Assembly (NCBI RefSeq): GCF_006345805.1
Contig: NW_021833210.1
Coordinates: 1 to 31,973, forward strand
Direction: 5' to 3'
Length of the DNA stretch: 31,973 nt
From: Octopus sinensis
Taxonomy: Eukaryota
Shown here: positions 988-31,206 of the stretch, in pieces
Layout: each line of letters starts with the position of its first letter
How positions within the stretch are numbered: position 1 is the first letter of the stretch
Translations under genes and position numbers: made by a program
Notes under the pieces: model-generated
Databases searched by the model: none
What the model was told of the DNA's origin: nothing
What the model saw: only the letters and a program-made list of their open reading frames with translations

Positions 988-3022
988 AATAAAAAGTTTG
1001 TTTTAAACCTTGGGATTACATAGAGAGTATTTTGCGTAGGATATGAGCAGTTCCCATGAGCACTATCTTTTGAATTTCTGCCATTTTGGGGTTTCCTGGT
1101 ATCTGAGTTAGGTAGCAATCAGTCCCTTTCGCTATCATTCCCAGGGCACCTATGACAACAGGTATTGTTTTAGTCTTCAGCTTCCACATTTTGCTGATTT
1201 CTATTTCAAGATCTTTATATTTGCTCAGTTTTTGGTAGGTCTTGACAGATACGTTTATATCGATTGGGACAGTCATATCAATGAGGAGGCATGTTCTTTG
1301 TCTGAAGTCTTTCAATATGATGTCTGGTCTATTTGCATCTGTCTTCCTGTCAGTTTGGATGGTGAAGTTCCAGAGGAGTGAGATGTGGTCATTTTCAAGC
1401 ACTGGAGGTGGATTGTGTTCCCACCAGTTTTTATTATGGGGCAAATCCAAGTTTTTGCAAATTACCCAGTGAATATATTGTGCAGCTCTATCATGCCTGT
1501 TGAGGTACTCTGTAGTCGCAAGAAGACTGCATTTGGAGACAACATGATCAATGGTTTCATTTTGTTGTCGGCATACACGACATGTTGGGCTACTGCCGTT
1601 CTTTAATATGTTGGCCTGGTAGTTTCTTGTTGGTAGGCATTGATCTTGAGCTGCTATGATAAACCCTTCTGTTTCAGATTTTAAGCCAGAGGCCATTAGC
1701 CATTGATGGGTCAGGGCTTTGTCAATATCTGCATTATTCGCTCTCTTTGGGTATTTGCCATAGAGAGGTTTTTCTTGCCATTTATTATTCAGAATATCTA
1801 AGGCCGCAGTTTTGGCACGGGTTTTCATGCGCTTAGCTTTTTCTGTGCTTGTTTCTTGTATGTTTATCTCTAATTCCGAAATTGGTTGTATTCGGAATTC
1901 ACTTAGATATTCCTTTGCCTATTTTGTGACTGAGTTTGATGCTTTCTTGTTTTCATGTTTTGAGACAAGTTTTAACATCCAGTCCTCAGAGTTTTTCAGG
2001 TAGGTGTCTAGGCCAATTGTAGCAATCTTCATTGTTATTGCAAGGTGTAAAAGACCACGGCCTCCCTCTTTTCTTGGCAGATAGAGTCGTTCTGTATCTG
2101 CCTTAGGGTGGTGCATTCTATGCAGTGTCAACAGTTTCCTTATTTTTCTGTCGAGCTGACATATTTCAGTAATTGACCAGTTAACAATATTGAAACTGTA
2201 AGTCACGACTGGTATGGCTAAAGCATTGATCGCTTCGATCCTGTTTCTTGCATTCAGCTCTGTCTTGAGTATTGCTCTCACTCTTCGATAGCATTCTCTC
2301 CTGGTCCTTTCCTTCATCTCTGAATGCCTTATTCCGTTCCCTTCAATTACCCCTAGGTACTTGTAGCTCTCCGCTGGGTCTAGTTCTTTATGACATTCTG
2401 CTGGTCAAGGTTAACGTTAGATGTTTCTGTCAGTTTTCCTTTGATAAAGGTAGCTTTTGCACATTTATCGAGGCCGAATTGCATTCTGATGTCGTCACTG
2501 AATTGTTTGACTATCGCTACTAAGCCCTTGAGTTGTTGGTCATTTTTTGCAACAAGCTTTAAATCATCCATGTAAATGAGATGATTTATATTTTTATCAA
2601 ACATTTTATACCCATATTGCGCATCATTGAGCAGCTTTGAGAGAGGTATTAAGGATAAACAAAAGAGGAGTGGTGACAGTGAGTCACCCTGGAAAATGCC
2701 ACACGAAATTTTTACATCACCAGCATTTAGGGATTCATTGTCACTGTTCAGAGTTAGTGTGGTTCTCCATGATCTCATACTTACAGTCAAGAAGTTTCGC
2801 AGAGTAGGTGCTATTTTATACATTTCCAGGCATTTCCTAATCCAGCTATGTGGTAGGCTATCAAAAGCCTTTTTATAGTCTATCCAGGCTATTGATAAGT
2901 TTTTGTGTCGTTTGTGACAATCTTCTAAGATCATCTTATTGATGAGTAGTTGGTCTTTACAGCCGTAGGATCCACGTTTACATCCTTTCTGTTCATTAGG
3001 GAATATGCTGTTGTCTGTTAAA
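774..3022 (-). mobile_element. Dong/R4-clade non-LTR retrotransposon, 5'-truncated, family A
   Basis: RT motifs EQKGCKRGSYGCKDQLLINK, IDYKKAFDS, GIFQGDSLSPLLF, YMDDLKL; CCHC knuckle CRVC..ETIDHVVSKC; REL motif RPDII..LIDMTVP..K; 3' UTR 774-1015 ending in (TAA)n. Confidence 0.95.
1016..3022 (-). pseudogene. Frameshifted RT-CCHC-REL ORF of the Dong-like LINE (pieces 2380-2934, 1919-2317, 1016-1828)
   Basis: Consecutive ORF-track pieces give a collinear RT, thumb, zinc knuckle and PD-(D/E)xK endonuclease. Confidence 0.9.
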
Positions 3023-5866: not shown

Positions 5867-7347
5867 TTTTCTAGTTTCAGCTCAGAGCTGCGGCCATGCT
5901 GATGGATCGCCGTTTTGTGCTACACTGTTCTTACGAAGAACCTCGTCTAATATGTGGCACTTGGTGAAGAATGGAGTTCGATATAGCTACTCTCATTTGC
6001 ACCTCTTGCCGTGAGGTAGGTTCATCTGGGACTCTTGACAGGAAGATGTCCAGCTTTGATTTAAAAACCGCTACATCTACTTTGTGCAAGTTCCTCAGAC
6101 TCTTTGTGAGAATATTAAAAAGTTGTGAGCCCTTGAATCCCAGGCTTTTGCAGAAGCTGGTCCTGAAGCGTGATGGCACTATGCAGTGTCGTCCCGCTCT
6201 AGTATTGGTGTAGCTTACAATGCCAAAATTTGGCACAATTCCTTCCAGGATCTTCCAAACATATATTGCTGCATACCTCTCCCGTTTTCTCTCCAGGGAG
6301 TAGAGTCTTAGCTGTTTCAACCTTTCCCAGTAGCTGAGCTGTTGCAAAGAGACGATCCTCTTTGTGAATCTTCTCTGGATTGCTTCAAGGTCCGCTGTTA
6401 ATTTCACACTGGTGGGTGACCATAGCTGTGAGCAGTAATCCATGCGGCTGAGGACGAATGTCCGCCAGAGGACCAACATCGTTTCCTTATCTCTGGTTCT
6501 GAATGTTCTTAGGATCCATCCATCCAGTCGTCTGCACTTTGTCGCAATCCTGGTAATGTGCACTTGGAAAGAGGTATCATCACTCATGTCGATACCCAGA
6601 TCCCTCACAGACTTAGGCTCTGGGATTGAAATTCCCTGTGGACCGGTGTATCCTGTAAGTTTAATATTCAGTTTTGGATGCTGGTAGCGCAGGGCCTGGA
6701 ATTTTTCAGCATTAAGCTGCATATATTATCTTCAGCCCATCTGTAGATTGAGTCCAATTCCTGCTGCAGGTGTGCAACATCGCTGGGGTTCTGTATTTTC
6801 TGCGAGAATTTCGTATCGTCTGCATAGCTTGCCAGAGTGGCTATCCGGGCATATCTGAGAGGGCCACTATAAAAAGCAGTGGTCCCAAGACAGTGCCCTG
6901 TGGAACACCGCTCACTATTTGTGTGTTCATAGAGGTGGCTCCATTAACCACTACTGCCTGACTCCTATCTTTCAGGAAGTCATGTAACCACACTCCAAGT
7001 TTTCCAGCTATGCCTAGGTCACGCAGTTTGTGGCATATCATACCATGATCCACCTTGTCAAAAGCTTTTGAAAAATCAAGGTAGATTACGTCCACATTTG
7101 ATTTGTTGAGTAATTGTCTCAACACCCAGTCATAATGTTGTAAGAGCTGGGTCAGGCAGCTCCTACCTGGTCGAAAACCATGCTGGGTATCACTCAGCAA
7201 GTTATTTTCCTCAAGGAATGCGATTAGTTTCTTTCTGACTATCCGTTCCAGGAATTTGCTGATGTGTGAAGTCAGAGAGATAGGCCTATAGCTTTTGTCA
7301 TCTGCTCTACTTCCCCCTTTATGTATTGGGCATATTATTTCTCCCTT
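5867..7347 (-). mobile_element. CR1-group LINE, 5'-truncated, frameshifted RT
   Basis: CPIHKGG..YRPISLTSH, QHGFRPGRSCLTQL, YLDFSKAFDKV, SGVPQGTVLGPLLF, YADDTK (frameshifted), VRDLG, EAIQRRFTK, YSLERKRER; short 3' UTR ending gctgaaactag. Confidence 0.92.
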
Positions 7348-7875: not shown

Positions 7876-7963
7876 TATATATGTATGCATGTATGTATGT
7901 ATGTATGTATGTATGTATGTATGTATGTATGTATGTATGTATGTATGTATGTATGTATGTATG
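7876..7963. repeat. (TATG)n microsatellite
   Basis: Perfect run; mirrored by (CATA)n at 8440-8472. Confidence 0.95.
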
Positions 7964-8439
7964 TGCAAGCCATTCAAACACAACTCTAATCCGATTTTCA
8001 CACATACACAAAAAAAAACATTTTCTGCATTAATCGAACAGTAAAGAACGAAAGCCAAAAAATCTCTTATGATAGTATAAATATAATTACTAACATGCGT
8101 GGTATTCGCTGTTTATTTCTCATCATGGCTTAGATACAATTGTAAAACTTTAAAATACGACAGCCAAGATAAGATGGACGGTAAAACTGTACTTATTATA
8201 GATACTTGAACAGGGATCGGAAAGGCAGTGGCAGAACATCTATCACAAGGAACTAAGGTTATATTAACATACTGTAACTTAACTAAAGCGAACACAGCAG
8301 CCGATGAAATGCTTTCTTCAACTGGTGTTTATTGGAAAATGATCAAATTTTCGTTCTTAATTGTCCGGTTGATGCAGAAAAAGTTTTTTTTTTGTGTATG
8401 TGTGAAAATCGGATTAGGGTTGTGTTTGAATGGCTTGCA
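7964..8439. mobile_element. Long-TIR fold-back / Pack-TIR-like element
   Basis: ~90-bp inverted arms 7964-8053 and 8349-8439 (tgcaagccattcaaacacaa...), about 90% identical by eye. Confidence 0.75.
8069..8326 (+). pseudogene. Decayed 5' fragment of a membrane-anchored short-chain dehydrogenase/reductase (RDH11-14-like)
   Basis: One frame: MIV*I*LLTCVVFAVYFSSWLRYNCKTLKYDSQDKMDGKTVLIIDT*TGIGKAVAEHLSQGTKVILTYCNLTKANTAADEMLSSTG; hydrophobic anchor, beta1 (GKTVLI), degenerate TGxxxGIG, helix, KVIL; three stops. Confidence 0.75.
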
Positions 8440-8473
8440 TATACATACATACATACATACATACATACATACT

Positions 8474-8630
8474 GGCACAGGAGTGGATGTGTGGTAAGTA
8501 GCTTGCTAACCAAGAACTTGGTTCCGGGTTCAGTCCCACTGCGTGGCATCTTGGGCAAGTGTCTTCTGCTATAGCCCCGGGCCGACCAATGCCTTGTGAG
8601 TGGATTTGGTAGACGGAAACTGAAAGAACC

Positions 8631-8664
<34 letters not shown>

Positions 8665-8899
8665 TATATATATATATATGTATGTGTGTTTGTCCCCCTA
8701 GCATGCTTGACAACCGATGCTGGTGTGTTTACGTCCCCGTCGCCTAGCGGTTCGGCAAAAAGAGACCGATACAATAAGTACTGGGCTTACAAAGAATAAG
8801 TCCCGTGGTCGATTTGCTCGACTAAAGGCGGTGCTCCAGCATGGCCACAGTCAAATGACTGAAACAAGCAAAAGAGGAAAAGATAGAGTAAAGAGTAAA
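8474..8899 (+). mobile_element. tRNA-headed CORE-type SINE
   Basis: A-box-like tggatgtgtgg, B-box-like ggttcagtccc, CORE-like ttgggcaagtgtctt, internal (TA)n, tail ggcggtgctccagcatggcc..ctgaaacaag; homologues at 12651 and 15629. Confidence 0.85.
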
Positions 8900-8910
8900 T
8901 TAAAAAATAG

Positions 8911-8992
8911 CAAGTTCTGGGGTTCGATTCATTCGAAGCACATTTCTTCAAGGAATTGCTCCAGCATTGCCGCAGTCTAATGATTGAAATAA
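8911..8992 (+). mobile_element. Degenerate SINE 3' tail
   Basis: ttgctccagcattgccgcagtctaatgattgaaa resembles the tail at 8830-8865. Confidence 0.5.
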
Positions 8993-9034
8993 ACCCGGAT
9001 TCGCCGGATATTTATTTCGGTACTGTAATATAAT

Positions 9035-9462
9035 GGATGGACTTTTTTGGTTTGAACGGCAGTTTTTAAGATAATTTCTAGGTAACTAAAAACTTTTAAA
9101 CTTCGTATACTGGTAGAATTTGTTAATAAAACATCTTTTTCTCTTGACTTTATTGAGACAATTCTACAGTTTGTAAGATATTTGTTGTTTTTTTTCTTCA
9201 ATTTCTGCAATTTCAACCAATCAGTGGCGTCCAGTGAGGTAAAAAAAACATTCTGTGCCGTATGAATATGTCCCTCGTTTAAGAAGCAACCTGGGTATAT
9301 TTACATTTGTGAAGAAAAAAAGATACACTTCCCCCACCCCTAACCCTAACCCTAACCCTGAAATAGATTGAAATGCAATAGATCGATACTAGGGTCAGAA
9401 TTATGGGTGACATTTTCATATGACACCGCTAGAAAAATCTGCCGTTCAAACTGAAAAGATCC
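9035..9462. mobile_element. MITE with ~29-bp TIRs (GGATCTTTTCGGTTTGAACGGCAG consensus) and internal (CCCTAA)3
   Basis: Ends ggac(t)ttttggtttgaacggcag / ctgccgttcaaactgaaaagatcc; inverted homologues at 14951 and 17975. Confidence 0.8.
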
Positions 9463-10798: not shown

Positions 10799-11170
10799 GG
10801 AGAAGAGAATTAATACATTCGAGCTTTGGTGCTGGAGAAGACTTTTACGGATTCCATGGACAGAGAGACTCACCAATGGAGAAGTTTTTAAGCAGATTAG
10901 GCCGAAAATGTCGCTAGAAGCTAGGATCACCAAGCATAGATTGGCATATTTCGGTCATATTATGCGGAGAAAATCCCTGGAGAAGGACATCATGCTCGGA
11001 ATGGTCAGTGGCAAGAGAGGAAGAGGCCGACCAAGAACCCGCTGGCTTCACACCATCAAGAGTGATACCGGAATGGACATGGCCAGTCTGAAAGAAGCGG
11101 CCCAGGAGAGAACTGACTGGAGGACACTGAGCCAACGAGTGACCGAGAGTCGACTTCCACTGAGCGGATA
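10798..11170 (+). mobile_element. RTE/BovB-type LINE 3' fragment
   Basis: RRINTFELWCWRRLLRIPWT..LAYFGHIMRR..SLEKDIMLG..GKRGRGRPRTRWL..W..RVTESR; typical RTE-BovB C-terminus. Confidence 0.9.
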
Positions 11171-12332
11171 TCCATATATATATAAAACTGAGAATGTGTG
11201 TCTGTCTGTCGGTCTTCTGTCTGTGTGTTTCCCTAAAACTTGAGAACTACACAACCAATTTCATTCACATTTTACACAAGCCTTACTTAGGGTCCGGGGA
11301 GTGTCATCGGCAAAATTTTGTTTACTTTTTGCCGAGGGCGAGCCCACAGCAATATCATATCTTCTCCACTACGATTCCCTAAAATTTGAGAACTACACAA
11401 CCAATTCCATTCAAATTTTACACATGCCTTACTTAGGGTCCATGTAGTTTCATGGGCAAAGTAAATGTTCACATTCTTGCCTAGAGCGAGCCCATAGCAA
11501 CATCATATCTTCTCCACTATTTCAGTATTACGTGTTAAAAGTGAAACAAAAACGTTTCTCTATTTTATGTCAGATACTTTCACTTTAACAATAAAAATAA
11601 TAATTACAATTGAATTGAATGTAGTAAGTAATAATTAAAATCAAACTAAAGTAACATAACAAAAGTAAATTTGCATCAATGATTTGAACTTGAATAAGTG
11701 GTTTCACATGAATGGGAATAAATTAAAAATAAAATTAGTGTGAAGAAATGGAATAGTCCAGATGGATAATACAAAACTAAATTAAAGAAAAGACTATTGT
11801 CTATAAAGTATACAATGTAGAGAAAAAAGGAGATTTGAACACATGGAGGAAAGCACCTTCGAAAAGTGTCGTGGTGCGACTATGAAAGGTATCTAATCAG
11901 AGGCGGAAAATTCGCCACAATAGAAGCAAGGTTTGAGTCAACGGAGCGTGCAAGGGAGTACTCGACTCGAACTTGCAAAGTGGAAATATTCTATCTTTAC
12001 CTTTATATCTGGGACGTAGGACGTCCCGGAAAAAAATTTAAATGCACCCTCCCCCCACCAGAAGTAGAGATAGGCTGGATTGTAGCCACACTTCTATACA
12101 AAACGGAGGACAAGATACAATTGATCGAAAGTACAAGAGACGGGCTAACAATTCCAGTCTGTTATATATTTTGTGTATTGTTATCACTAGCGATATCAAA
12201 ATATAACTTTGTATTTTGTATTTTATGTGTAAATGTATACATATAGATGTACATAGTACATGTACACATACATATGCATATATATACATGCACTAGAACT
12301 ATAACCCGGCAACGACGGGTCTTTAATGCTAG
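11171..12332 (+). mobile_element. Non-autonomous Helitron
   Basis: A|TC 5' end (TCCATATATATAAAACTG), subterminal hairpin acccg-gcaacga-cgggt, CTAG|T 3' end, no TSD. Confidence 0.85.
11231..11519. repeat. ~146-bp x2 internal tandem repeat of the Helitron
   Basis: cctaaaa(c/t)ttgagaactacacaacc...atcatatcttctccacta occurs twice. Confidence 0.85.
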
Positions 12333-12628: not shown

Positions 12629-12650
12629 TATATATATATATACATATATA

Positions 12651-13053
12651 CTCTTTTACTCTGTTACTTGTTTCAGTCATTTTACTGTGGCCATGCTAGA
12701 GCACCGACTTTAGTCGAGCAAATCGACTCCAGGACTTATTCTTTGTAAGCCTAGTACTTATTCTATCGGTGTCTTTTGCCGAACCGCTAAGTTACGGACG
12801 TAAACACACCAGCATCGGTTGTGAAGCGATGTTGGGAGACACACAGACACACAGACAACATACAACACACACATACATTTATATACATATATACGACGGG
12901 CTTCTTTCAGTTTCCATCTACCAAATCCACTCACAAGGCTTTGGTCGGCCAAAGACTATAGTAGAAGACACTTGCCCAAGGTGCCACGTAGTGGGACTGA
13001 ACCTGGAACCATGTGGTTGGTAAGCAAGCTACTTACCACACAGCCACTCCTAC
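12651..13053 (-). mobile_element. tRNA-headed CORE-type SINE
   Basis: Reverse-complement homologue of 8474-8899. Confidence 0.85.
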
Positions 13054-13140
13054 CTTCATCTTTATTCCAGTTGTTGGGCCGTGGTTATGCTGGAGCAGCA
13101 CCTCGAACAAATTTAGTCGATTTATTCGACTGAAAACCAG

Positions 13141-13210
13141 CTGGAAACCGTTCAGCGACGTGCAACCGAGAGAAAACCCTCCTTAGGCATTTGCCATATT
13201 CTGGACGCCT
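13141..13210 (+). mobile_element. Tiny CR1-like RT C-terminal fragment (duplicated ~16120-16187)
   Basis: LETVQRRAT..PSL/RHLPYSGRL with frameshift. Confidence 0.55.
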
Positions 13211-13212
13211 TA

Positions 13213-13730
13213 CCGTAAATCCTCGAATATATTCCGCCCTATAATACGTAGGGGATTTTTAGGGGACTGTACCTCTGAGAAACCTAAACCTTGTGTATAA
13301 CTTGAGTCAAGGAGGTCTATAAAATGTCCTTGCTTTGTAAAAAGGTATATGGTAACGTCCTTAATTATTATTGTATACATAACATAATGCAAACATGTAG
13401 CTTTTTTGTGCATTTTGTTTGTAGAAAATAAAGAAATAACAGTAATAACGTCAGTGAAAAATAAATATTAAGTAAATTGCCTTTACATATTTATCACTAT
13501 CAGTTACAAAAGCAAAGTCATTTATTCAAATCCTTCAAATTCAACCTCTCTTTCAGCATCAAATAACTGTTCTATTTGTTCCCCCGTAAACATGTCAGCA
13601 TCATTGTAGTGTAAATCTCCGTCATCGTCAGATTCATAGTCAACATCAGACGATTCCCTATCATTTATTTCATCTTTCCATACAACGTCATCCAGTGCAG
13701 ACGACATACATTTGATAAAACTTTCCTAAC
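13213..13730 (-). mobile_element. pogo/Tc2-type DNA transposon 3' end (TIR plus transposase C-terminus)
   Basis: TA|CCGTAAATCCTCGAATATATTCCGC TIR; ORF remnant (RK)SFIKCMSSALDDVVWKDE..acidic..LFDAEREVEFEGFE*. Confidence 0.75.
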
Positions 13731-13814
13731 ACCAACCACTCAGCAGAATGGACCGAGTGCTTTTATGTGGCACCAGCACCGGCAGGGTCACCAAATAACT
13801 TGGAAGACAAGGAA

Positions 13815-14740
13815 TTCTGAGAGGGGGAGGGGACATTTAAGGAGGGGATCTTGTGTCGGATGAGGAAAGGTTAGAGTGAGACAGAAAGACAGAAACAGGT
13901 GGGTAGCATGTAGGGGAGGTACAAGGTTACTCAGCCAGATAGAGTGAAGGTGACAGTGAAGGAAAGAGGGAGAAATAGTGAAGGAAAGAGGGAGGGAGGG
14001 GTGTGAGTAAGAGGGGGAGAGGGTGGGAGAGATGGAGAAAGGGAGAAAGGGCAGGGCGGAAGTAAGAGTGAGAGAGGGTGGGAGAGGGAGAGGGAGAGAG
14101 GGTAGGAAAGTGAATGAGAGGGATAGAGTGAGAGAGCAGAGGCAGAGAGAGGAAGAGGGAGGGAGAGAGGAGATGAGACAGAGTGGGAGGGAGGGTGAGA
14201 GAGAGGAGAGATGGAGAGAGAGAGGGGAGACGGAGAGAGACGGAGAAAAGAGCGGAAAGAGGGCGAGGGGAGGGGGCGAAAGGGCGAGAGACAGAGGGAG
14301 AGAGGGGAAAGACAGAGGGAGAGAGAGAAAATGAAAGATGGAGAGGGGAGAGAGAGGGAGAGAGAACGAGGACGGAAGCAAGTGTGTTGCTGTAGAGGAG
14401 ATGCATGGTTAGAGAGAGAGAGAGGAGGGGAGAAAGAGGAAGAGTGAGGAAGAGAGAGAGAGTGCTAGAGAGAGCAGGAGAACGATAATGGTGAAGTGTC
14501 GGGGGAGGGCAGAACATAGAAAGGGTGATAGAGTAAAGGAAGAGAGAGAGAGAGAGAGAGAGAAATGGCAGCAAGTGGGAGGGGAATAGCGTGGAGGTAG
14601 AGGGAGGCTACGATATAAGTGGCAGGACATTGCCAAGGAAACGCGAGAAGGTAGCGGGAGGCAGAGACTAGTGAGATCATGGGTATATAGAGGGAGGGAG
14701 GGAGGGATAGGAATGATAGAGAGAGCAGAGCGGGGGGGAC
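13815..14740. repeat. ~0.9-kb GA-rich purine tract (duplicate 16795-17765)
   Basis: Low complexity; source of L/S/P and R/E/G ORFs. Confidence 0.9.
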
Positions 14741-14950
14741 AGCATTCGTCACTGCGGCGTATAAGGGACTTGCTTACTGGACTGGTCAAAGGGAGAATAC
14801 TCGAGCTTGCCGATCGACAAGGTTTATTATTTGTTTACTAATTACCTGCCCCTAATGGATTTCTACCGCCAGCTTCAAGAGGTATATGCCCCCCCCCGTC
14901 ATTAAGGGTGCTGAGTCGTTCATAGGGTTAAGTGTCTTATATATGCGAAT

Positions 14951-15336
14951 GGATCTTTTCGGTTTGAACGGAAGTGTTTTCTAGCGGTGTCATATGAAAT
15001 TGTCACCCATAATTATGACCCTAGTATTTTAGGGTTAGGGGTGGGGGAAGGGTATCTTTTTTTTCAGAAATGTAAATAAACGCAATCTGTTTCTTAAACG
15101 AGGGACATATTCATACGGCACAGAATGTTTTTTTTTTACCTCAATAGACGTCATTGATTGGTTGAAATTGCATAAATTGAAAGAAAAAAACAACAAATAT
15201 CTTAGAACCATAGACTTTTCCCAATAAAGCCAAGAGAAAGATGTTTTATAAACACATTCTACCATTATACGTAGTTTAAAAGTTTAGTTACGTGGAAATT
15301 ATTTTTAAGAAACTGCCGTTCAAACCGAATGTATCC
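14951..15336. mobile_element. MITE, same family as 9035-9462, opposite orientation
   Basis: TIRs ggatcttttcggtttgaacgg / ccgttcaaaccgaatgtatcc. Confidence 0.8.
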
Positions 15337-15628
15337 CACTCTATGAGGGTACATATGCTGAACTGCATATCAATATATATATATAATATATATATAATAA
15401 AATATTACATATTATAAAGGGCTTAGTAAAATAAATTATTTTGCCACATCCTGAACTTTGCCACATGTACACACTGGCAAAGTAATTTATTTTACTAAGC
15501 CCTTTATAAAATGATATTTTGAATTCGCCTTAAATGGTCCCTTTACATACTGAATACCTGGTGAAATTGATTAATAATTAATTAATTTTACCCTCAATTG
15601 TTGAAATATATATATATATACATATATA

Positions 15629-16032
15629 CTCTTTTACTCTGTTACTTGTTTCAGTCATTTTACTGTGGCCATGCTAGAGCACCGACTTTAGTCGAGCAAA
15701 TCGACTCCAGGACTTATTCTTTGTAAGCCTAGTACTTATTCTATCGGTGTCTTTTGCCGAACCGCTAAGTTACGGAGACGTAAACACACCAGCATCGGTT
15801 GTGAAGCGATGTTGGGGAGACAAACACAGACACACAAACACATACACACACATACATTTATATACATATATACGACGGGCTTCTTTCAGTTTCCATCTAC
15901 CAAATCCACTCACAAGGCTTTGGTCGGCCAAAGACTATAGTAGAAGACACTTGCCCAAGGTGCCACGTAGTGGGACTGAACCTGGAACCATGTGGTTGGT
16001 AAGCAAGCTACTTACCACACAGCCACTCCTAC
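15629..16032 (-). mobile_element. tRNA-headed CORE-type SINE (duplicate)
   Basis: Copy within the 3-kb duplication. Confidence 0.85.
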
Positions 16033-16189
16033 CTTCATCTTTATTCCAGTTGTTGGGCCGTGGTTATGCTGGAGCAGCACCTCGAACAAATTTAGTCGAT
16101 TTATTCGACTGAAAACCAGCTGGAAACGTTCAGCGACGTGCAACCGAGAGAAAACCCTCCTTAGGCATTGCCATATTCTGGACGCCTTA

Positions 16190-16710
16190 CCGTAAATCCT
16201 CGAATATATTCCGCCCTATAATACGTAGGGGATTTTTAGGGGACTGTACCTCTGAGAAACCTAAACCTTGTGTATAACTTGAGTCAAGGAGGTCTATAAA
16301 ATGTCCTTGCTTTGTAAAAAGGTATATGGTAACGTCCTTAATTATTATTGTATACATAACATATGAAAACATGTAGCTTTTTTGTGCATTTTGTTTGTAG
16401 AAAATAAAGAAATAACAGTAATAAAACGTCAGTGAAAAATAAATATTAAGTAAATTGCCTTTACAATTTATCACTATCAGTTACAAAAGCAAAGTCATTT
16501 ATTCAAATCCTTCAAATTCAACCTCTCTTTCAGCAATCAAATAACTGTTCTATTTGTTCCCCCGTAAACATGTCAGCATCATTGTAGTGTAAATCTCCGT
16601 CATCGTCAGATTCATAGTCAACATCAGACGATTCCCATCATTTATTTCATCCTTCCATACAACGTCATCCAGTGCAGACGACATACATTTGATAAAACTT
16701 TCCTAACACC
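16190..16710 (-). mobile_element. pogo/Tc2-type 3' end (duplicate)
   Basis: Same TIR and C-terminus, with an extra 1-nt insertion. Confidence 0.75.
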
Positions 16711-17974
16711 AACCACTCAGCAGAATGACCGAGTGCTTTTATGTGGCACCAGCACCGGCAGGGTCACCAAATAACTTGGAAGACAAGGAATTCTGAGAGG
16801 GGGAGGGGACATTTAAGGAGGGGATCTTGTGTCGGATGAGGAAAGGTTAGAGTGAGACAGAAAGACAGGAAAGGTGGGTAGCAGTAGGGGAGGTACAAGG
16901 TTACTCAGCCAGATAGAGTGAAGGTGACAGTGAAGGAAAGAGGGAGAAATAGTGAAGGAAAGAGGGAGGGAGGGGTGTGAGTAAGAGGGGGAGAGGGTGG
17001 GAGAGATGGAGAAAGGGAGAAAGGCAGGGCGGAAGTAAGAGTGAGAGAGGTGGGAAGGGGGGAGAGGGAGAGGGAGAGAGGGTAGGAAAGTGAATGAGAG
17101 GGATAGAGTGAGAGAGCAGAGGCAGAGAGAGGAAGAGGGAGGGAGAGAGGAGATGAGACAGAGTGGGAGGGAGGGTGAGAGAGAGGAGAGATGGAGAGAG
17201 AGAGGGGAGACGGAGAGAGAGGGACGGAGAAAAGAGCGGAAAGGGGGCGAGGGGAGGGGGCGAAAGGGCGAGAGACAGAGGGAGAGAGGGGAAAGACAGA
17301 GGGAGAGAGAGAAAAGGAAAGATGGAGAGGGGAGAGAGAGGGAGAGAGAACGAGGACGGAAGCAAGTGTGTTGCTGTAGAGGAGATGCATGGTTAGAGAG
17401 AGAGAGAGGAGGGGAGAAAGAGGAAGAGTGAGGAAGAGAGAGAGAGGTGAGAGAGAGGAGACGAGGAGTGCTGAGAGGGCAGAGAGAGAAGGGTGAAGAG
17501 TGGGGGGAGGGAGGGCAGAAAACATAGAAAGGGTGAAGGGGTGAGTAGAGAGGGTGTAAAGGAAGAGAGAGAGAGAGAGAGAGAGAATGGCAGCAAGTGG
17601 GAGGGGAATAGCGTGGAGGTAGAGGGAGGCTACGATATAAGTGGCAGGACATTGCCAAGGAAACGCGAGAAGGTAGCGGGAGGCAGAGACTAATGAGATC
17701 ATGGGTATATAGAGGGAGGGAGGGAGGGATAGGAATGATAGAGAGAGCAGAGCGGGGGGGGGGACAGCATTCGTCACTGCGGCGTATAAGGGACTTGCTT
17801 ACTGGACTGGTCAAAGGGAGAATACTCGAGCTTGCCGATCGACAAGGTTTATTATTTGTTTACTAATTACCTGCCCCTAATGGATTTCTACCGCCAGCTT
17901 CAAGAGGTATATGCCCCCCCCCGTCATTAAGGGTGCTGAGTCGTTCATAGGGTTAAGTGTCTATATATGCGAAT

Positions 17975-18361
17975 GGATCTTTTCGGTTTGAACGGAAGTG
18001 TTTTCTAGCGGTGTCATATGAAATTGTCACCCATAATTATGACCCTAGTATTTTAGGGTTAGGGGTGGGGGAAGGGTATCTTTTTTTTCAGAAATGTAAA
18101 TAAACGCAATCTGTTTCTTAAACGAGGGACATATTCATACGGCACAGAATGTTTTTTTTTACCTCAATAGACGTCATTGATTGGTTGAAATTGCATAAAT
18201 TGAAAGAAAAAAACAACAAATATCTTAGAAACCATAGACTTTTCCCAATAAAGCCAAGAGAAAAAGATGTTTTATAAACACATTCTACCATTATACGTAG
18301 TTTAAAAGTTTAGTTACGTGGAAATTATTTTTAAGAAACTGCGTTCAAACCGAATGTATCC
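17975..18361. mobile_element. MITE (duplicate)
   Basis: As 14951-15336. Confidence 0.8.
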
Positions 18362-18795: not shown

Positions 18796-19289
18796 ATACA
18801 AACAATCATGAATGATTGAATATTGAATTTTGAGATACTAGAAGGCACCAACTCAACCCAGTATCAGAGCGAGCTAGAAGCCACAGCTAGTATCACCAAA
18901 TTCAAAGTATGAATGAAAGCTTGTGTCACCAGTCCCTTGCCACCCGCGTGTAGCCAAGACAAAGTGCTGTGGTCATTTACTGGGATGGATATGGTTTATG
19001 AGTAACAATGAAGGGTGAAATTAATTAATTTGGAACAATTATCAATTACACCAAGTAGTCTTCGGCATGTAAAAGCCTCATTCGAGGAAAATTTAAGTAA
19101 TACTAAGCAATTAAGGGTTTAGCAACGAATTGCCTTACCACACACCGAATTTAGAAATAGCAGTCAAAGAGATTATAGCTATTTCTTCTACTAAAAGGGA
19201 CATCACAGTAAAGGCACAGCATTTGAAAGGCAAACACAAACAGGTAAAAGAGAATGAATTAACGGCAATCTATCATACAGTTTTAAGTT

Positions 19290-21060: not shown

Positions 21061-22060
21061 AGTCGATCAGTTTGTCTACCTGGGAAGCACTATTAATAGA
21101 TATGGCAATGTGGATGATGAAATTCCATATAGAATTAGGAAAGCAAGTGTTGCTTTCGGAAGGCTAGAAAAGCGCCTCTGGAGTCGGCGAGATATATGCA
21201 GAAAGACAAAGATAAAGGCGTACAAGGCATGTGTGCTCCCTTTTATTCTCTATGCCTGCGAGAGGTGGGTCGCATATCGATACCACCTTAAACAGCTGGA
21301 CCGTTTCCATCAGATGTGCCTCAGATGGATCTATGGCATTAAGTGGAATGACCGCATCAGTGATCTTGAAATACTCGAAGGCTCTCGGTGTGAAAGTATA
21401 GAAGATCTCGTGTTAAAGCAAAGGCTCAGATGGATTAGCTAAAGGAGAACGACCTCCACATTAACCAAAAAAGAGATATAAGGACTTGCTGAAGGCTTAC
21501 TTAAGAGATGCTTGCATCTCTCCTGACACATGGGAAGGCATTGATCGTAGCAGGTGGAGAAGGATTGTGCCTGAGGGGACAGCCACTTTTGAGAAATCTC
21601 GAGTTGCACATGAGAAAGTAAGGAGATATGTCAGGAAAGGCATCGCTGTTACACTTCCAGAAGGGAAGGGTCTTCCTTTGATTCTGACATGCAATATTTG
21701 TGCAAGACCCTGCCTCAGTAAAGCTGGACTCATGAGTCATCTTCGTAGTCATAAAACGAGACAGATGAGTGACAACCTGGCCACTGGTGGTGGTGTAACA
21801 AACCATACTAATCATATCTGTCGGGCATGTGGAAGAGAGTGTAATTCAGCAGGAGGACTTAAACGACATGCAAAGGTACATGAAGCCCAGTTACAACTAC
21901 AGCCGACTATTACCAGAAAAGGTTATAGCTGCCAATTCTGTACAAGACATTGTAGATCTTTGGCTGGGCTGAAAAGTCACATTCGATCACAGAACCAGTA
22001 ACAGTTAGGCTTCGTGCTATGGCCATACTCGATAAAAAGGGGGCTGCCATAAAAAAGGGG
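21061..22060 (+). mobile_element. RTE-clade LINE 3' part with three C-terminal C2H2-like zinc fingers, internally deleted
   Basis: FVYLGSTI..DDEIPYRIRKASVAFGRL..TKIKAYKACVLP..LYACE.W..LDRFHQMCLR..RLRW; CNIC..GLMSHLRSH, CRAC..GLKRHAKVH, CQFC..GLKSHIR; tail ggccatactcgat. Confidence 0.9.
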
Positions 22061-25914: not shown

Positions 25915-26180
25915 TGTGCCTTTGTTAGGGCATCCTTCTAGGAGAAGGTAACTCAGGTAACTGGGATAAGTCCGACATAAAACCTGCGGCTCAGTGGTTA
26001 CCGATGATGTTCACTTGTTCTTCTTTTCGGATTATGGCTGCTGTTGCTTAGTGAGTGGGATTGACTAAGTGCACAGCCTTTCCTTACTTTAAAAAGACGT
26101 CTTGCACAGGCATTGCACGATAACAACATTGATTAAGCTTTTGCGCAATGGCCATACTCGATAACGAGGGGGCAGCCACC
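25915..26180 (+). mobile_element. Short RTE-tailed non-autonomous element
   Basis: ctaggagaaggtaactc (RTE 5'-UTR-like) and tail atggccatactcgat..ggggcagccacca shared with 22018-22050. Confidence 0.55.
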
Positions 26181-28885: not shown

Positions 28886-30598
28886 GTTAGTTAGTTAGTT
28901 AGTTAGTTAATTTGGCTCAAAAGCAAATAGCAAGGCCATGTAGGGGGACATGGAGTTATGTTCAGGGTGGTGTTCATGTAAAGAGTTCAGGCCACTTGAA
29001 GTCAAGGTAGGCTTTGAACAAAGCGGTCGTCGGCATCTTCACCATCTCGTCTGGCAGCTTGTTCCACGGATCCGCAACCCGGACGGAGAAAGCTCCTCTT
29101 CTTCGATTGAGATGAAATCGTCGCAGGTAGAGCTTTTCGGAATGACCCCGCAGCCGACGCTCTGGAGCAGGAGTGAAGAACTGCTCTTTCGAGAGGTTAC
29201 ACTTTCCGCTAATGATGTTGTGGGCGAGAATGAGATCACCACGGCGGCGGCGTTTTTCTAGAGAATAAAGGTCGAGCGTCTTCAGCCTTTCTTCGTAGGA
29301 CAAATTTTGGAGACCATCAATCATGTGGGTAGCCAGCCTCTGGACTCCTTCGAGATGCTGAATGTCTTTGAAGAGATAAGGAGAAGAGGCTTGAATCCCG
29401 TACTCCAATATGGGTCTCACCAGCGGAACATAGAGTGGTAGGAATATGGCTGCTGTGAGCATTCCGAATGACCGTCGAATCAAGAACAGAATTCCGCGTG
29501 CTTTGTTGGCAGCATGGACGCACTGGGCCGAAGGCGAAATGGAGGAATCCACCAAGATACCCAGGTCCTTTACCTGATCGGTCCTCTCCAGAAGCAGACG
29601 GCCCAGCTCGAAATCAAGTTGAGTTGCAGGAGGAGAGCCAACAGGCAGATGACAGCACTTTGACACGTTCAGACACAGGTCCCATTCGTTAGACCACCTC
29701 CAAATTTGGTGGAGGCATCCTCTATATCACCGCGAGGAGCGACCAATTTGACATCGTCGGCTAATAGAAGGGTGTGTTGCGTGAGGTCGTCGGGCAAGTC
29801 ATTTATGAAGACTAAGAACAATAAGGGTCCAAACACTGAACCTTCAGGCACGCCACAGCTCGCACTGGAGACGTCGGACCGCGAACCATTAACTTCGACT
29901 TGGAAGGAGCGATCTGAGAGGAAGGCACCAACCCATCGTACAATATCCGGATGGAAACTATATGCTTGAAGCTTGACAAGTAATAGGCGGTGGTTTACCG
30001 AGTCAAAAGCTTTGGCAAAGTCCAATAAAACGATGTCAACAGCATCACTATCATCGAGGATGCGCGTCACCAATTCTTCCATTACCAGTAAGTTGGTCAA
30101 GCATGATCTCTTCGGCACGAAGCCGTATTGGGAATCAGAGATAGAGGCTGCGTTTTGGAGGTGGAGCATCATACTTTTCTTAAGGATGGTTTCGAACATC
30201 TTGCTGATTATTGATGTAAGGGAAACCGGTCGGTAGTTAAGCGGGCCTTCGCGGCTCCCTTTCTTCGAAATTGGGCAGATTATCGCTGTTCTCCAGTCCG
30301 CAGGTATAACACCCGTCGCCAATGACATATTGAATAGACGTGTTAAGGGCTCGCAGATGACCGGAGCCAACGCTTTGATAACCTGTGTTTTTATGCCGTC
30401 AGGCCTTGACCCTTGTTGACATCGAGGCCTTGAATAACACGTTTGACTTCGTCCCGCGTGATGACAAATCGGAGCATTGGAGGTACCGATCTATCAAATG
30501 GAGGGGGTTCACGACCATCATCTTGTTTGAAAATAGTTGAAAAAGCCTCGGCAAAGAATTGACACTGTTGATAAGGGTCCTCAATCGATACGCCTTTT
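28886..30598 (-). mobile_element. CR1-group LINE, 5'-truncated, with (TAAC)n tail
   Basis: NYRPVSLTS, QYGFVPKRSCLTNLL, LDFAKAFDSV, GVPEGSVFGPLLF, LADDVKL, KDLG, YSLEKRRRRGDLI, LRGH, RVADPWNKLP; tail 28886-28909. Confidence 0.93.
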
Positions 30599-30711
30599 GA
30601 GTATGTATGTACGTATGTATGAATGTGTTTATGCATGTGTGTATATATGTTTGTATGTATATATGTATATATGAGGGTATGTGTGTACGTACTTATGTAT
30701 GTGTGTACGTA

Positions 30712-31206
30712 CGAGTGTGCGTCGAAAACTAATGTCATTTTGTTTAGGAAAGGTAGAATTACCAACACAGGAACATGTATCATACATCAAAATGAATCTT
30801 GGCCCCAGTGGATCACATCCCTACTCTTTAATATAGTTACCGTTTCTCTCAAAAGCAATGTTTCTTCTTCGAATGAGAGCATGTATTCCTGCCCTGTAAA
30901 ATTCTGTTGAATGTTCTTTGAGCCACATCTTCACCACAGTTCTTACTTCTTCGTCACTGGTATAATGTTTGTCTCTCAAACCCTCTTTTGTTGCGCCGAA
31001 GGGATTATAGTCTGAAGTGCAAAATCTGGTGAGTGTGGAGGTAATGAAGAAATGGCTCAAAGAACACTCAACGGAATTTCACTGGCGGGGATACATGCAG
31101 TCATTCGAAGGTAGACCATTGCTTTTGAGAGAAACAGCAGCTATTTTGTGGATAAGGGATGTGATCCACTGAGGACCAGCTTCATTTTGATGTATGATAC
31201 ATGTTC
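30712..31206. mobile_element. mariner remnant made of two 3' ends in inverted orientation
   Basis: TA|CGAG TIR; minus strand PHSPDFA.SDY..EEVRTVVKMWL..FYRAGIHALIRR..NGNYIKE*; plus-strand copy 31039-31206. Confidence 0.8.

What the first reader, a model, noticed from the sequence alone, without database searches (positions are those of the whole stretch)
7876..8472. Long-TIR element carrying a captured dehydrogenase gene fragment (Pack-TIR-like)
Seen: ~90-bp inverted arms, extended outward by mirror-image (TATG)n/(CATA)n, enclose ~295 bp that are almost entirely one reading frame (8069-8326): hydrophobic N-terminal anchor, then MDGKTVLIIDT*TGIGKAVAEHLSQGTKVIL. Single-base reversions (ata>aca, gat>ggt, act>gct, tga>tca) restore TGASTGIG, the SDR Rossmann motif; the pattern matches RDH11-14-like enzymes. 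The ORF track misses it because of the stops. Inference: a non-autonomous TIR element captured a host 5' coding exon, or an inverted duplication trapped a pseudogene piece. The arms could pair in a transcript or extrude as a cruciform.
Basis: partly seen in the sequence, partly recalled or inferred. Interest (0 to 1): 0.72.

Follow-up and report, generated by a model that had tools for sequence, protein, structure and literature searches.

The report
Decayed dehydrogenase exon with fold-back repeat
This is a dead, cut-short copy of the first exon of an octopus retinol-dehydrogenase-like gene whose upstream flank was copied backwards onto its other side next to a SINE, which is ordinary genome decay and not a gene-capturing transposon.

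Summary
The two arms (unique part 7965-8056 and 8349-8438, about 92% alike) are mirrored outward by (TATG)22 and (ATAC)8. They enclose about 295 bp that are a decayed SDR fragment.

The fragment matches residues 1-94 of Octopus bimaculoides XP_052834074.1, a retinol-dehydrogenase 11/14-like paralogue, at 63-65% identity. It has three in-frame stops and a broken glycine motif. It ends 57 nt before the real exon-1 donor site.

The Pack-TIR reading is not supported:
- There is no target-site duplication outside the arms.
- The only other copy of the arm (O. bimaculoides RDH cluster, L001 5108-5187) is solo. It lies directly upstream of the same truncated pseudo-exon, which there runs straight into the downstream sequence X.
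- In the window, the inverted arm plus a full SINE sits exactly at that junction, between two AAATT copies.
- The two arms are each other's closest relatives.

Best reading: a break at the exon|X junction, a fold-back of the 3' end on ATT/AAT microhomology, and copying of the 5' flank into the microsatellite. The end was then joined to the SINE, either during retrotransposition or by template switching. No function is expected. Interest is low.

The parts
7876..7964 (+). (TATG)22 microsatellite. Its inner ~34 nt form the outer part of the left arm.
   Evidence: TRF. Inverted-repeat pair I1. An AT/GT-rich microsatellite sits at the same place in the paralogous copy L001 5017-5100.
7965..8056 (+). 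Left arm A, the 5' flank of the pseudo-exon and the original copy.
   Evidence: Homologous to L001 5108-5187 (79.8% over 89 nt, E = 6e-17; local alignment score 90 against a null of 17 +/- 2.6). In L001 it is also directly upstream of the pseudo-exon.
8057..8068 (+). Short leader between the arm and the former start codon.
   Evidence: Colinear with the leader of the L001 copies.
8069..8347 (+). Pseudo-exon E, a decayed copy of codons 1-94 of an octopus RDH11/14-like SDR exon 1. It covers the start Met, the hydrophobic anchor, and Rossmann strand 1 to helix 2. Stops are at codons 4, 6 and 47, and it carries a 3-bp deletion.
   Evidence: tblastn of P0001 residues 1-94 gives 62.8% identity, E = 4.8e-30, and no other SDR piece in the window. 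The real exon 1 runs to residue ~113.
8345..8349 (+). AAATT, left copy. This is the end of E plus the first bases of X, the break and fold-back point.
   Evidence: L001 has one AAATT at the uninterrupted E|X junction.
8349..8438 (-). Right arm A', an inverted copy of A.
   Evidence: The three-way alignment shows A and A' share a TAATCC insertion and an A-run that L001 lacks, and each arm has private changes.
8439..8472 (+). (ATAC)8, mirroring (TATG)n. It is the junction between A' and the SINE head.
8473..8896 (+). Full-length SINE copy with a (TAAAAGAG)-like tail.
   Evidence: Two further copies in the window at about 85% identity, and many in the octopus loci. Heads and tails were compared.
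8897..9030 (+). X, the 3' domain of an older SINE variant. It begins with the right AAATT copy (8897-8901). In the paralogue it follows E directly.

Best explanation
The locus is a non-functional relic built in two steps.

Step 1 (shown). A DNA-level duplicate of the 5' end of an octopus retinol-dehydrogenase 11/14-like SDR gene was joined to X, the 3' domain of an old SINE, giving microsatellite-A-E-X. The duplicate comprises the upstream flank A plus the first 94 codons of exon 1. The same unit, with the same end point and the same 3-bp deletion, lies in the O. bimaculoides RDH gene cluster, where exon-1 pieces are amplified locally.

Step 2 (inferred). The DNA broke in the A-rich site AAATT at the E|X junction. 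The free 3' end ...TCAAATT folded back on its own strand and paired ATT with AAT at the inner end of A. It was then extended leftward through A into the (TATG)n array, producing the inverted arm A'. That end was then joined to a SINE followed by X.

The join to the SINE could have happened in two ways:
(i) The break was the target nick of a SINE retrotransposition, and the folded-back end primed second-strand synthesis on the SINE cDNA. The AAATT pair would then be the target-site duplication.
(ii) The end switched template through the microsatellite onto a paralogous SINE-X-Y copy.

The arms have since diverged by about 8%. Nothing suggests a present function. If transcribed, the region would form a ~125-bp hairpin with a 295-nt loop.
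For: The pseudo-exon and its parent family are established. The closest relative is XP_052834074.1, LOC128251279, of O. bimaculoides.

Evidence that the fragment is not a clean exon capture:
- It is truncated inside exon 1.
- No other SDR exon lies in the 32-kb window.

Evidence from the paralogous unit L001 5017-5621:
- It contains the microsatellite, A and E, 79% identical over 477 nt, followed directly by X.
- It shares the 3-bp deletion GAACATCT---ATC.
- It has only one arm. The window's right arm matches the same L001 segment in reverse.

Empty-site test. The window flanks 8290-8349 and 8902-8960, joined, align to the L001 E|X junction at 101 of 116 identical with no gap at the joint. The 547 bp of A' + (ATAC)8 + SINE are bracketed by AAATT and AAATT.

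Evidence that A' was copied from the local A:
- A and A' share derived characters against the L001 arm: a TAATCC insertion and an A9-10 run.
- Each arm has private substitutions.
- The inner end of A' reads ACGAAAAT, as in L001. This gives a 3-nt ATT/AAT overlap with the end of E.

The SINE is full length with a tail that ends at the right AAATT.

Precedent from the literature:
- L1 target sites show inversions and inverted duplications from self-annealing of the nicked ends (PMC11702581).
- Fold-back templated inverted duplications form at double-strand breaks through microhomology (PMC11724301).
Against: - An O. sinensis locus (L005 19055-18263) carries the same SINE|X junction and the same X-Y junction without A' or E. 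Upstream of its SINE is a partial SINE 5' half plus (TA)n. The SINE|X junction may therefore be older than the rearrangement, which weakens sub-variant (i) and the reading of AAATT as a target-site duplication.
- Five bases are too few to prove a target-site duplication.
- Mismatches between the arms are concentrated in the inner 25 nt (6 of 7). A single copying event does not predict this.
- Only one outgroup copy of the arm was available, from what may be another species. A closer paralogous source for A' in the window's own genome cannot be excluded.
- The right (ATAC)8 may be SINE-associated and not copied. Two of the four other SINE heads examined are also preceded by microsatellites.
- The outer ~70 nt of the arm could not be shown to be homologous to the upstream regions of the intact-looking RDH exon-1 copies. 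Its ultimate origin is unknown.
Confidence: 0.62

Rival explanations
1. Pack-TIR-like element. A non-autonomous DNA transposon with ~90-bp terminal inverted repeats captured the 5' exon of an SDR gene and is, or was, mobile as a unit.
For: Long, well-matched inverted arms enclose a gene fragment. DNA transposons and MITEs do exist in octopus genomes (PMC13282606). A MITE-like element lies 570 bp away.
Against: - There is no direct repeat outside the arms. The flanks are GATAAATATA on the left and TGGCACAGGA on the right.
- The only other arm copy is solo and contiguous with the same pseudo-exon.
- The empty-site comparison places the right arm inside an insertion together with a SINE.
- No further arm copy was found in the window or in the ~69 kb (non-overlapping) of octopus RDH loci fetched.
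Confidence: 0.04
2. 5' transduction. An antisense read-through transcript started near the inner end of an A copy, ran through the microsatellite into a SINE lying in that orientation, and was retrotransposed as A'-(ATAC)n-SINE into the AAATT site.
For: A'-(ATAC)n-SINE-tail has exactly the layout of such an RNA, and it is bracketed by AAATT/AAATT with the tail at the right end. In L001 a SINE variant does lie in that orientation about 1.3 kb to the left of the arm.
Against: - No SINE lies to the left of the local arm in the window, so the source would have to be another copy.
- Landing 295 bp from a paralogous arm would then be a coincidence.
- A' is closest to the local A among the copies seen.
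- The same SINE|X junction in L005 has no A'.
Confidence: 0.1
3. The palindrome is ancestral. A-E-A'-SINE-X is the older state, and the O. bimaculoides copy lost A' and the SINE by deletion between the two AAATT repeats.
For: Deletions between short direct repeats occur, and palindromic DNA is unstable. The data do not polarise the change directly.
Against: - It needs an exact reversal of a 547-bp segment ending at a SINE tail.
- The A/A' divergence of about 8% is much lower than the ~20% between the window and L001 copies of A and E. A' is therefore younger than the split of the two copies, unless gene conversion acted.
Confidence: 0.08
4. Assembly or library artefact, such as a chimeric palindromic read.
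For: Inverted duplications can be created by amplification or by missed adapters.
Against: The arms differ at 7 positions plus one indel, with private changes on both arms relative to an outgroup. There is a 295-bp spacer, and the microsatellites have different lengths.
Confidence: 0.02

Closest known systems
Fold-back (hairpin-primed) templated inverted duplications at DNA breaks, including those at LINE/SINE integration sites
   Same: - An inverted copy of adjacent sequence starts at a break point with 3-nt microhomology.
- The spacer is short.
- The junction to a retroelement has its tail at the far end.
- Inverted duplications and fold-backs at L1 target sites are described in PMC11702581. 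Microhomology-primed fold-back insertions at double-strand breaks are described in PMC11724301.
   Different: - This is a germline-fixed event in an octopus that has since diverged by about 8%.
- The copied tract is ~125 nt, longer than the 5-34 bp typical in the yeast assay.
- Whether reverse transcription was involved is not settled.
Gene-fragment pseudogenes from tandem or segmental duplication in the octopus RDH11/14-like cluster
   Same: - It has the same exon-1 sequence family.
- It has the same truncated unit as L001 5017-5621.
- O. bimaculoides has six exon-1 copies or pieces within about 15 kb.
   Different: The window holds no other SDR exon within 32 kb, so this copy is either at the edge of such a cluster or dispersed. 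Its genomic position relative to the cluster could not be determined.
Pack-MULE / Pack-TIR elements (DNA transposons carrying captured gene fragments)
   Same: Inverted arms flank a host gene fragment.
   Different: - There is no target-site duplication.
- The arms are not shared with other cargo.
- The arm is contiguous with the gene fragment in a one-armed paralogue.
- The right arm arrived together with a SINE.
Retinol dehydrogenase 11-14 / DHRS13 group of classical SDRs
   Same: N-terminal membrane anchor followed by the GKTVLITGAxxGIGK Rossmann motif. It is 63-65% identical to the octopus paralogue and 35-49% identical to RDH-like proteins of other animals.
   Different: Only residues 1-94 are present, with three stops and a destroyed glycine motif. 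The NNAG and YxxxK regions, encoded by the rest of exon 1 and by exon 2, are absent.

Membership tests
Pack-TIR / Pack-MULE-like gene-capturing DNA transposon | Target-site duplication of fixed length directly outside both terminal inverted repeats | tested here: not met
   The flanks outside the mirrored microsatellites are GATAAATATA and TGGCACAGGA, the latter being the SINE head. No direct repeat is present. The microsatellites themselves are inverted, not direct.
Pack-TIR / Pack-MULE-like gene-capturing DNA transposon | The same terminal inverted repeats recur as a pair in other copies, with the same or different cargo | tested here: not met
   The arm occurs only at these two places in the window. 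In the ~69 kb (non-overlapping) of octopus RDH loci fetched it occurs once, solo. A metagenome scan gave only chance 18-mers. The source genome itself could not be searched.
Pack-TIR / Pack-MULE-like gene-capturing DNA transposon | The cargo is foreign to the termini, that is, the termini do not come from the captured gene's own locus | tested here: not met
   The left arm is contiguous with the same pseudo-exon in the paralogous copy L001 5108-5481.
Pack-TIR / Pack-MULE-like gene-capturing DNA transposon | An autonomous partner element with matching termini and a transposase | not testable with these tools
   No octopus genome or repeat library is searchable here.
Classical SDR (adh_short), RDH11-14-like | N-terminal Rossmann fold with the TGxxxGxG motif | tested here: inconclusive
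   Homology to this region is clear. The motif itself reads IDT*TGIG, broken by two substitutions and a stop.
Classical SDR (adh_short), RDH11-14-like | Catalytic Ser...YxxxK and NNAG motifs, that is, a complete enzyme | tested here: not met
   The fragment ends at residue 94. No further SDR-coding piece lies in the window. Exon 2 of the real genes carries LINNAG onward.
Fold-back templated inverted duplication at a break | The inverted copy is derived from the adjacent sequence, so the arms are sister to each other relative to paralogues | tested here: met
   The three-way alignment shows a shared TAATCC insertion and A-run, with private changes on both arms.
Fold-back templated inverted duplication at a break | A related site lacks the inverted copy and is colinear across the junction | tested here: met
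   The joined window flanks align to the L001 E|X junction at 101 of 116 identical, with no gap at the joint.
Fold-back templated inverted duplication at a break | Microhomology at the fold-back junction | tested here: inconclusive
   A 3-nt ATT/AAT overlap is inferred only if the ancestral arm read ACGAAAAT, as both the L001 arm and A' do. The present left arm reads ACGAAAGCC.
Retrotransposition (TPRT) insertion of a SINE | Full element with a 3' tail, flanked by a target-site duplication at an A-rich site | tested here: inconclusive
   AAATT lies on both sides, and the tail ends at the right copy. However, the same SINE|X junction exists in O. sinensis L005 in another left context.
Processed pseudogene (retrocopy) | Spliced mRNA copy with an intact 3' end and a poly(A) tail, usually 5'-truncated | tested here: not met
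   The fragment keeps the 5' flank and start codon, lacks the 3' part of exon 1 and all of exon 2, and has no poly(A).

The most novel reading that the evidence does not exclude
The microsatellite-A-exon-X unit is not just a local duplicate. It would be a dispersed, repeatedly copied module that SINE and LINE activity moves around octopus genomes. The hairpin made here would be transcribed into a long double-stranded RNA, a possible ADAR or small-RNA substrate, with sequence identity to the 5' ends of the RDH11/14-like paralogues.
Probability: 0.07. Interest if true: 0.55.

Novelty: new member of a known kind. Interest (0 to 1): 0.2.

Why it matters
It matters little beyond annotation. The locus should be labelled as an RDH11/14-like pseudogene fragment with a local inverted duplication, next to a SINE and a MITE-like element. 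It should not be labelled as a gene-capturing transposon family.

It is a tidy fossil example of a fold-back inverted duplication at a retroelement junction in a cephalopod germline. It also shows how such events create long hairpin-forming repeats in a genome known for heavy RNA editing. That link is speculative and untested here.

Tried and rejected
1. The word-indexed protein search with the pseudo-peptide found no candidate. The exhaustive search was needed.
2. A word-indexed search with the first 112 residues of P0001 returned only distant RDH-like proteins and no octopus paralogues, not even P0001 itself. Searching with the exon-2 translation did find them.
3. Exact look-ups of two LINE ORFs from the window, meant to place the window in an assembly, found nothing on record. 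The species and position of the window remain undetermined. Repeat identities are slightly higher to the O. sinensis loci than to the O. bimaculoides loci.
4. I tested the idea that the arm is simply the native promoter region of the intact-looking RDH exon-1 copies. Local alignments were not better than shuffles, except against the one A-type copy, so I dropped the claim.
5. I tested the idea that RDH upstream sequence resumes after the MITE-like element. It was not significant.
6. My first reading was that the AAATT pair proves a de novo SINE insertion. I weakened it after finding the same SINE|X junction in O. sinensis L005.
7. Rfam found no family in the window, and ARAGORN found no tRNA.
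8. A metagenome scan with an 18-mer shared by all three arm copies gave 45 hits, none extending beyond 28 nt.

Full report
**What is there**

The window is repeat-rich animal DNA. It holds LINE reverse-transcriptase fragments, three copies of a ~420-bp SINE and many (TATG)n arrays. At the reported coordinates the inverted repeat is real.

- Arms 7931-8024 and 8379-8472 are 94 nt and 96% complementary. They continue inward as 8010-8053 / 8349-8392 at 86%, with a one-base offset in an A-run.
- Without the microsatellites, the arms are 7965-8056 and 8349-8438 and are about 92% identical.
- Arm probes match nowhere else in the window, with zero matches expected by chance.
- The single strand folds with z = -17.8.
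- (TATG)22 lies outside the left arm and (ATAC)8 outside the right arm.

**The interior**

Frame 8069-8347 reads MIV*I*LLTCVVFAVYFSSWLRYNCKTLKYDSQDKMDGKTVLIIDT*TGIGKAVAEHLSQGTKVILTYCNLTKANTAADEMLSSTGVYWKMIK.

- Pfam adh_short matches profile positions 1-45 weakly, E = 0.009, below the cut-off.
- The PDB search gives 108 hits with E <= 10, mostly SDRs among the 60 listed, aligned at their N-termini. The best is E = 1.3e-6.
- The exhaustive search against 1.84 billion representatives gives one strong hit, P0001, at E = 5.9e-24.
- P0001 is XP_052834074.1, "uncharacterized protein LOC128251279" of Octopus bimaculoides. BLASTP gives 65% identity over 86 residues, starting at the initiator region.
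- Other hits, and the octopus paralogues found later, are named retinol dehydrogenase 11, 12, 13 or 14.

The closest relative reads TGASSGIGK where the window reads IDT*TGIGK.

**It is a truncated pseudogene piece, not a clean exon**

- In O. bimaculoides the real exon 1 encodes residues 1 to about 113 and ends ...DSVRKCAKE before a GT.
- Exon 2 encodes the rest, from LINNAG onward.
- The window fragment stops at residue 94, which is 57 nt short of the donor site.
- It carries three stops and a 3-bp deletion.
- tblastn with five RDH-like proteins finds no other SDR piece in the 32-kb window.

**Comparison with octopus RDH loci**

I fetched DNA around P0001 and its paralogues:
- L001-L003 are O. 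bimaculoides CM046630.1, about 6.706-6.744 Mb.
- L004 and L005 are O. sinensis CM016887.1, about 4.281-4.311 Mb.

The O. bimaculoides cluster holds six exon-1 copies or pieces within about 15 kb.

One of them, L001 5017-5621, is the key comparator.
- It aligns with window 7876-8349 (microsatellite, left arm and pseudo-exon) at 79% over 477 nt.
- It shares the 3-bp deletion.
- It ends its exon homology at the same base.
- It then continues directly into a 135-bp sequence that I call X, the 3' domain of an older SINE variant. X corresponds to window 8897-9030.

This copy has the arm only once. The window's right arm matches that same L001 segment in reverse, and no partner lies downstream. The arm therefore travels with the gene fragment as its 5' flank and is not a transposon terminus.

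I could not show that the outer ~70 nt of the arm are homologous to the upstream regions of the intact-looking exon-1 copies. The deeper origin of the arm is open.

**Where the right arm sits**

- L001 reads ...GGTCAAATTAAAACATAACAAG... across the E|X junction.
- The window reads ...GATCAAATT, then 8350-8896, then AAATTAAAAAATAGCAAG...
- Joining the window flanks gives 101 of 116 identities to L001, with no gap at the joint.
- The intervening 547 bp are the inverted arm, (ATAC)8 and a full-length SINE whose (TAAAAGAG)-like tail ends at the right AAATT.

A three-way alignment shows the following:
- The two window arms share a TAATCC insertion and an A9-10 run that the L001 arm lacks.
- Each arm has private substitutions.
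- The inner end of the right arm still reads ACGAAAAT, as in L001.

The right arm was therefore copied from the local left arm, and both have drifted since. The junction ...TCAA[ATT]TTCGTTC carries a 3-nt overlap, consistent with the 3' end ...AAATT pairing with AAT at the inner end of the arm.

**Mechanism**

The simplest account has four stages:
1. A break occurred at the A-rich E|X junction.
2. The 3' end folded back on its own strand.
3. DNA synthesis ran through the arm into the (TATG)n array.
4. That end was joined to the SINE.

Two versions of the final join fit the data.
- In the first version, the break was the target nick of a SINE retrotransposition, and AAATT is its target-site duplication.
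- In the second version, the end switched template through the microsatellite onto a paralogous SINE-X-Y segment.

The second version gains weight from O. sinensis L005 19055-18263. That locus has the same SINE|X junction and the same X-Y junction, but a different left context: a partial SINE 5' half plus (TA)n. Identity to the window is 93-95% in the SINE and 88-89% in X and Y. I cannot decide between the two versions.

Both kinds of event are documented. Inversions, inverted duplications and fold-backs occur at L1 integration sites (PMC11702581). Microhomology-primed fold-back insertions occur at double-strand breaks (PMC11724301).

The arm divergence of about 8% can be roughly dated. The octopus repeat paper equates a Jukes-Cantor distance of 0.09 from consensus with 25 million years (PMC13282606). 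On that calibration the event is on the order of ten million years old. This is a rough inference.

**Why it is not Pack-TIR**

- There is no target-site duplication outside the arms.
- No second two-armed copy was found in the window, in the ~69 kb (non-overlapping) of octopus RDH loci fetched, or in metagenomes, which hold no octopus DNA.
- The arm is contiguous with the cargo in a one-armed paralogue.
- The right arm lies inside an insertion together with a SINE.

The remaining weakness is that the source genome itself could not be searched.

**Other rivals**

- A 5' transduction by an antisense read-through transcript would give the same layout. It needs a source locus that is not seen locally.
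- An ancestral palindrome with later precise loss in L001 is less parsimonious. It is also contradicted by the arms being much more alike (92%) than the two copies of the unit are (about 80%).
- An assembly artefact is unlikely, given the private substitutions on both arms.

**Function**

None is expected. The coding fragment is dead and truncated. If the region is transcribed, it would form a long hairpin. Whether that happens needs RNA data.

**Verdict**

This is an ordinary product of gene-cluster duplication and repeat-associated rearrangement.

Noticed in passing
window 9039-9462: A MITE-like element with 29-nt terminal inverted repeats, 83% complementary (GGACTTTTTTGGTTTGAACGGCAG... / ...CTGCCGTTCAAACTGAAAAGATCC). 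It is flanked by TAATGGAT and TAATGGTT, a possible 8-bp target-site duplication, which from memory is hAT-like. Two more copies lie at about 15029-15329 and 18053-18354 on the minus strand, and others in O. sinensis L004 and L005. Those copies show no clear target-site duplication.
   Followed up: partly
window 9335-9360 (inside the MITE-like element); also the copies near 15040 and 18065: A short interstitial telomere-like run, CCCCTAACCCTAACCCTAACCCT, is carried inside the MITE-like element. It is therefore spread by that repeat and does not mark a chromosome fusion.
   Followed up: partly
window about 12630-14800 and about 15610-17820: A roughly 3-kb tandem duplication. SINE copies at 12652-13051 and 15630-16030 match each other, as do the (GGAGAGAG)n arrays at 13983-14365 and 16957-17349 and the ORF sets. 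The offset is about 2.98 kb.
   Followed up: no
L001 10001-13460 (O. bimaculoides LOC128251279, XP_052834074.1): This annotated 234-aa protein joins a genuine RDH exon 1 (residues 1 to about 113) to two tandem repeat-like segments (...SRDxGSxPEEIxxAADxxAAS...) and has no catalytic half. It looks like a gene model built on an orphan exon 1, not a real enzyme.
   Followed up: partly
L003 10001-25246 (O. bimaculoides CM046630.1, about 6.716-6.731 Mb): Six copies or pieces of RDH exon 1 lie within about 15 kb, on both strands. Several are preceded by the same SINE-tail fragment X plus an upstream region. The O. sinensis counterpart has just a head-to-head gene pair. Exon 1 has therefore been amplified locally in O. 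bimaculoides.
   Followed up: partly
window 8441-8475; L001 16303-16340; L005 about 19055-19090: Three of five SINE heads examined are directly preceded by a microsatellite: (ATAC)n, (ATAG)n and (TA)n. This suggests that SINEs insert into microsatellites, or that microsatellites grow at SINE 5' junctions.
   Followed up: no
window 25918-26031: A 114-bp segment between two long (TATG)n arrays is 96.5% identical to O. sinensis L005 386-499. That is far above the 84% typical of repeat matches here. It may be a young repeat or a conserved non-coding piece.
   Followed up: no
window 1016-2934, 5931-7200, 10908-11243, 21110-22001, 28974-30783: Several open frames read like fragments of LINE or Penelope-type reverse transcriptases on both strands. 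None was characterised.
   Followed up: no
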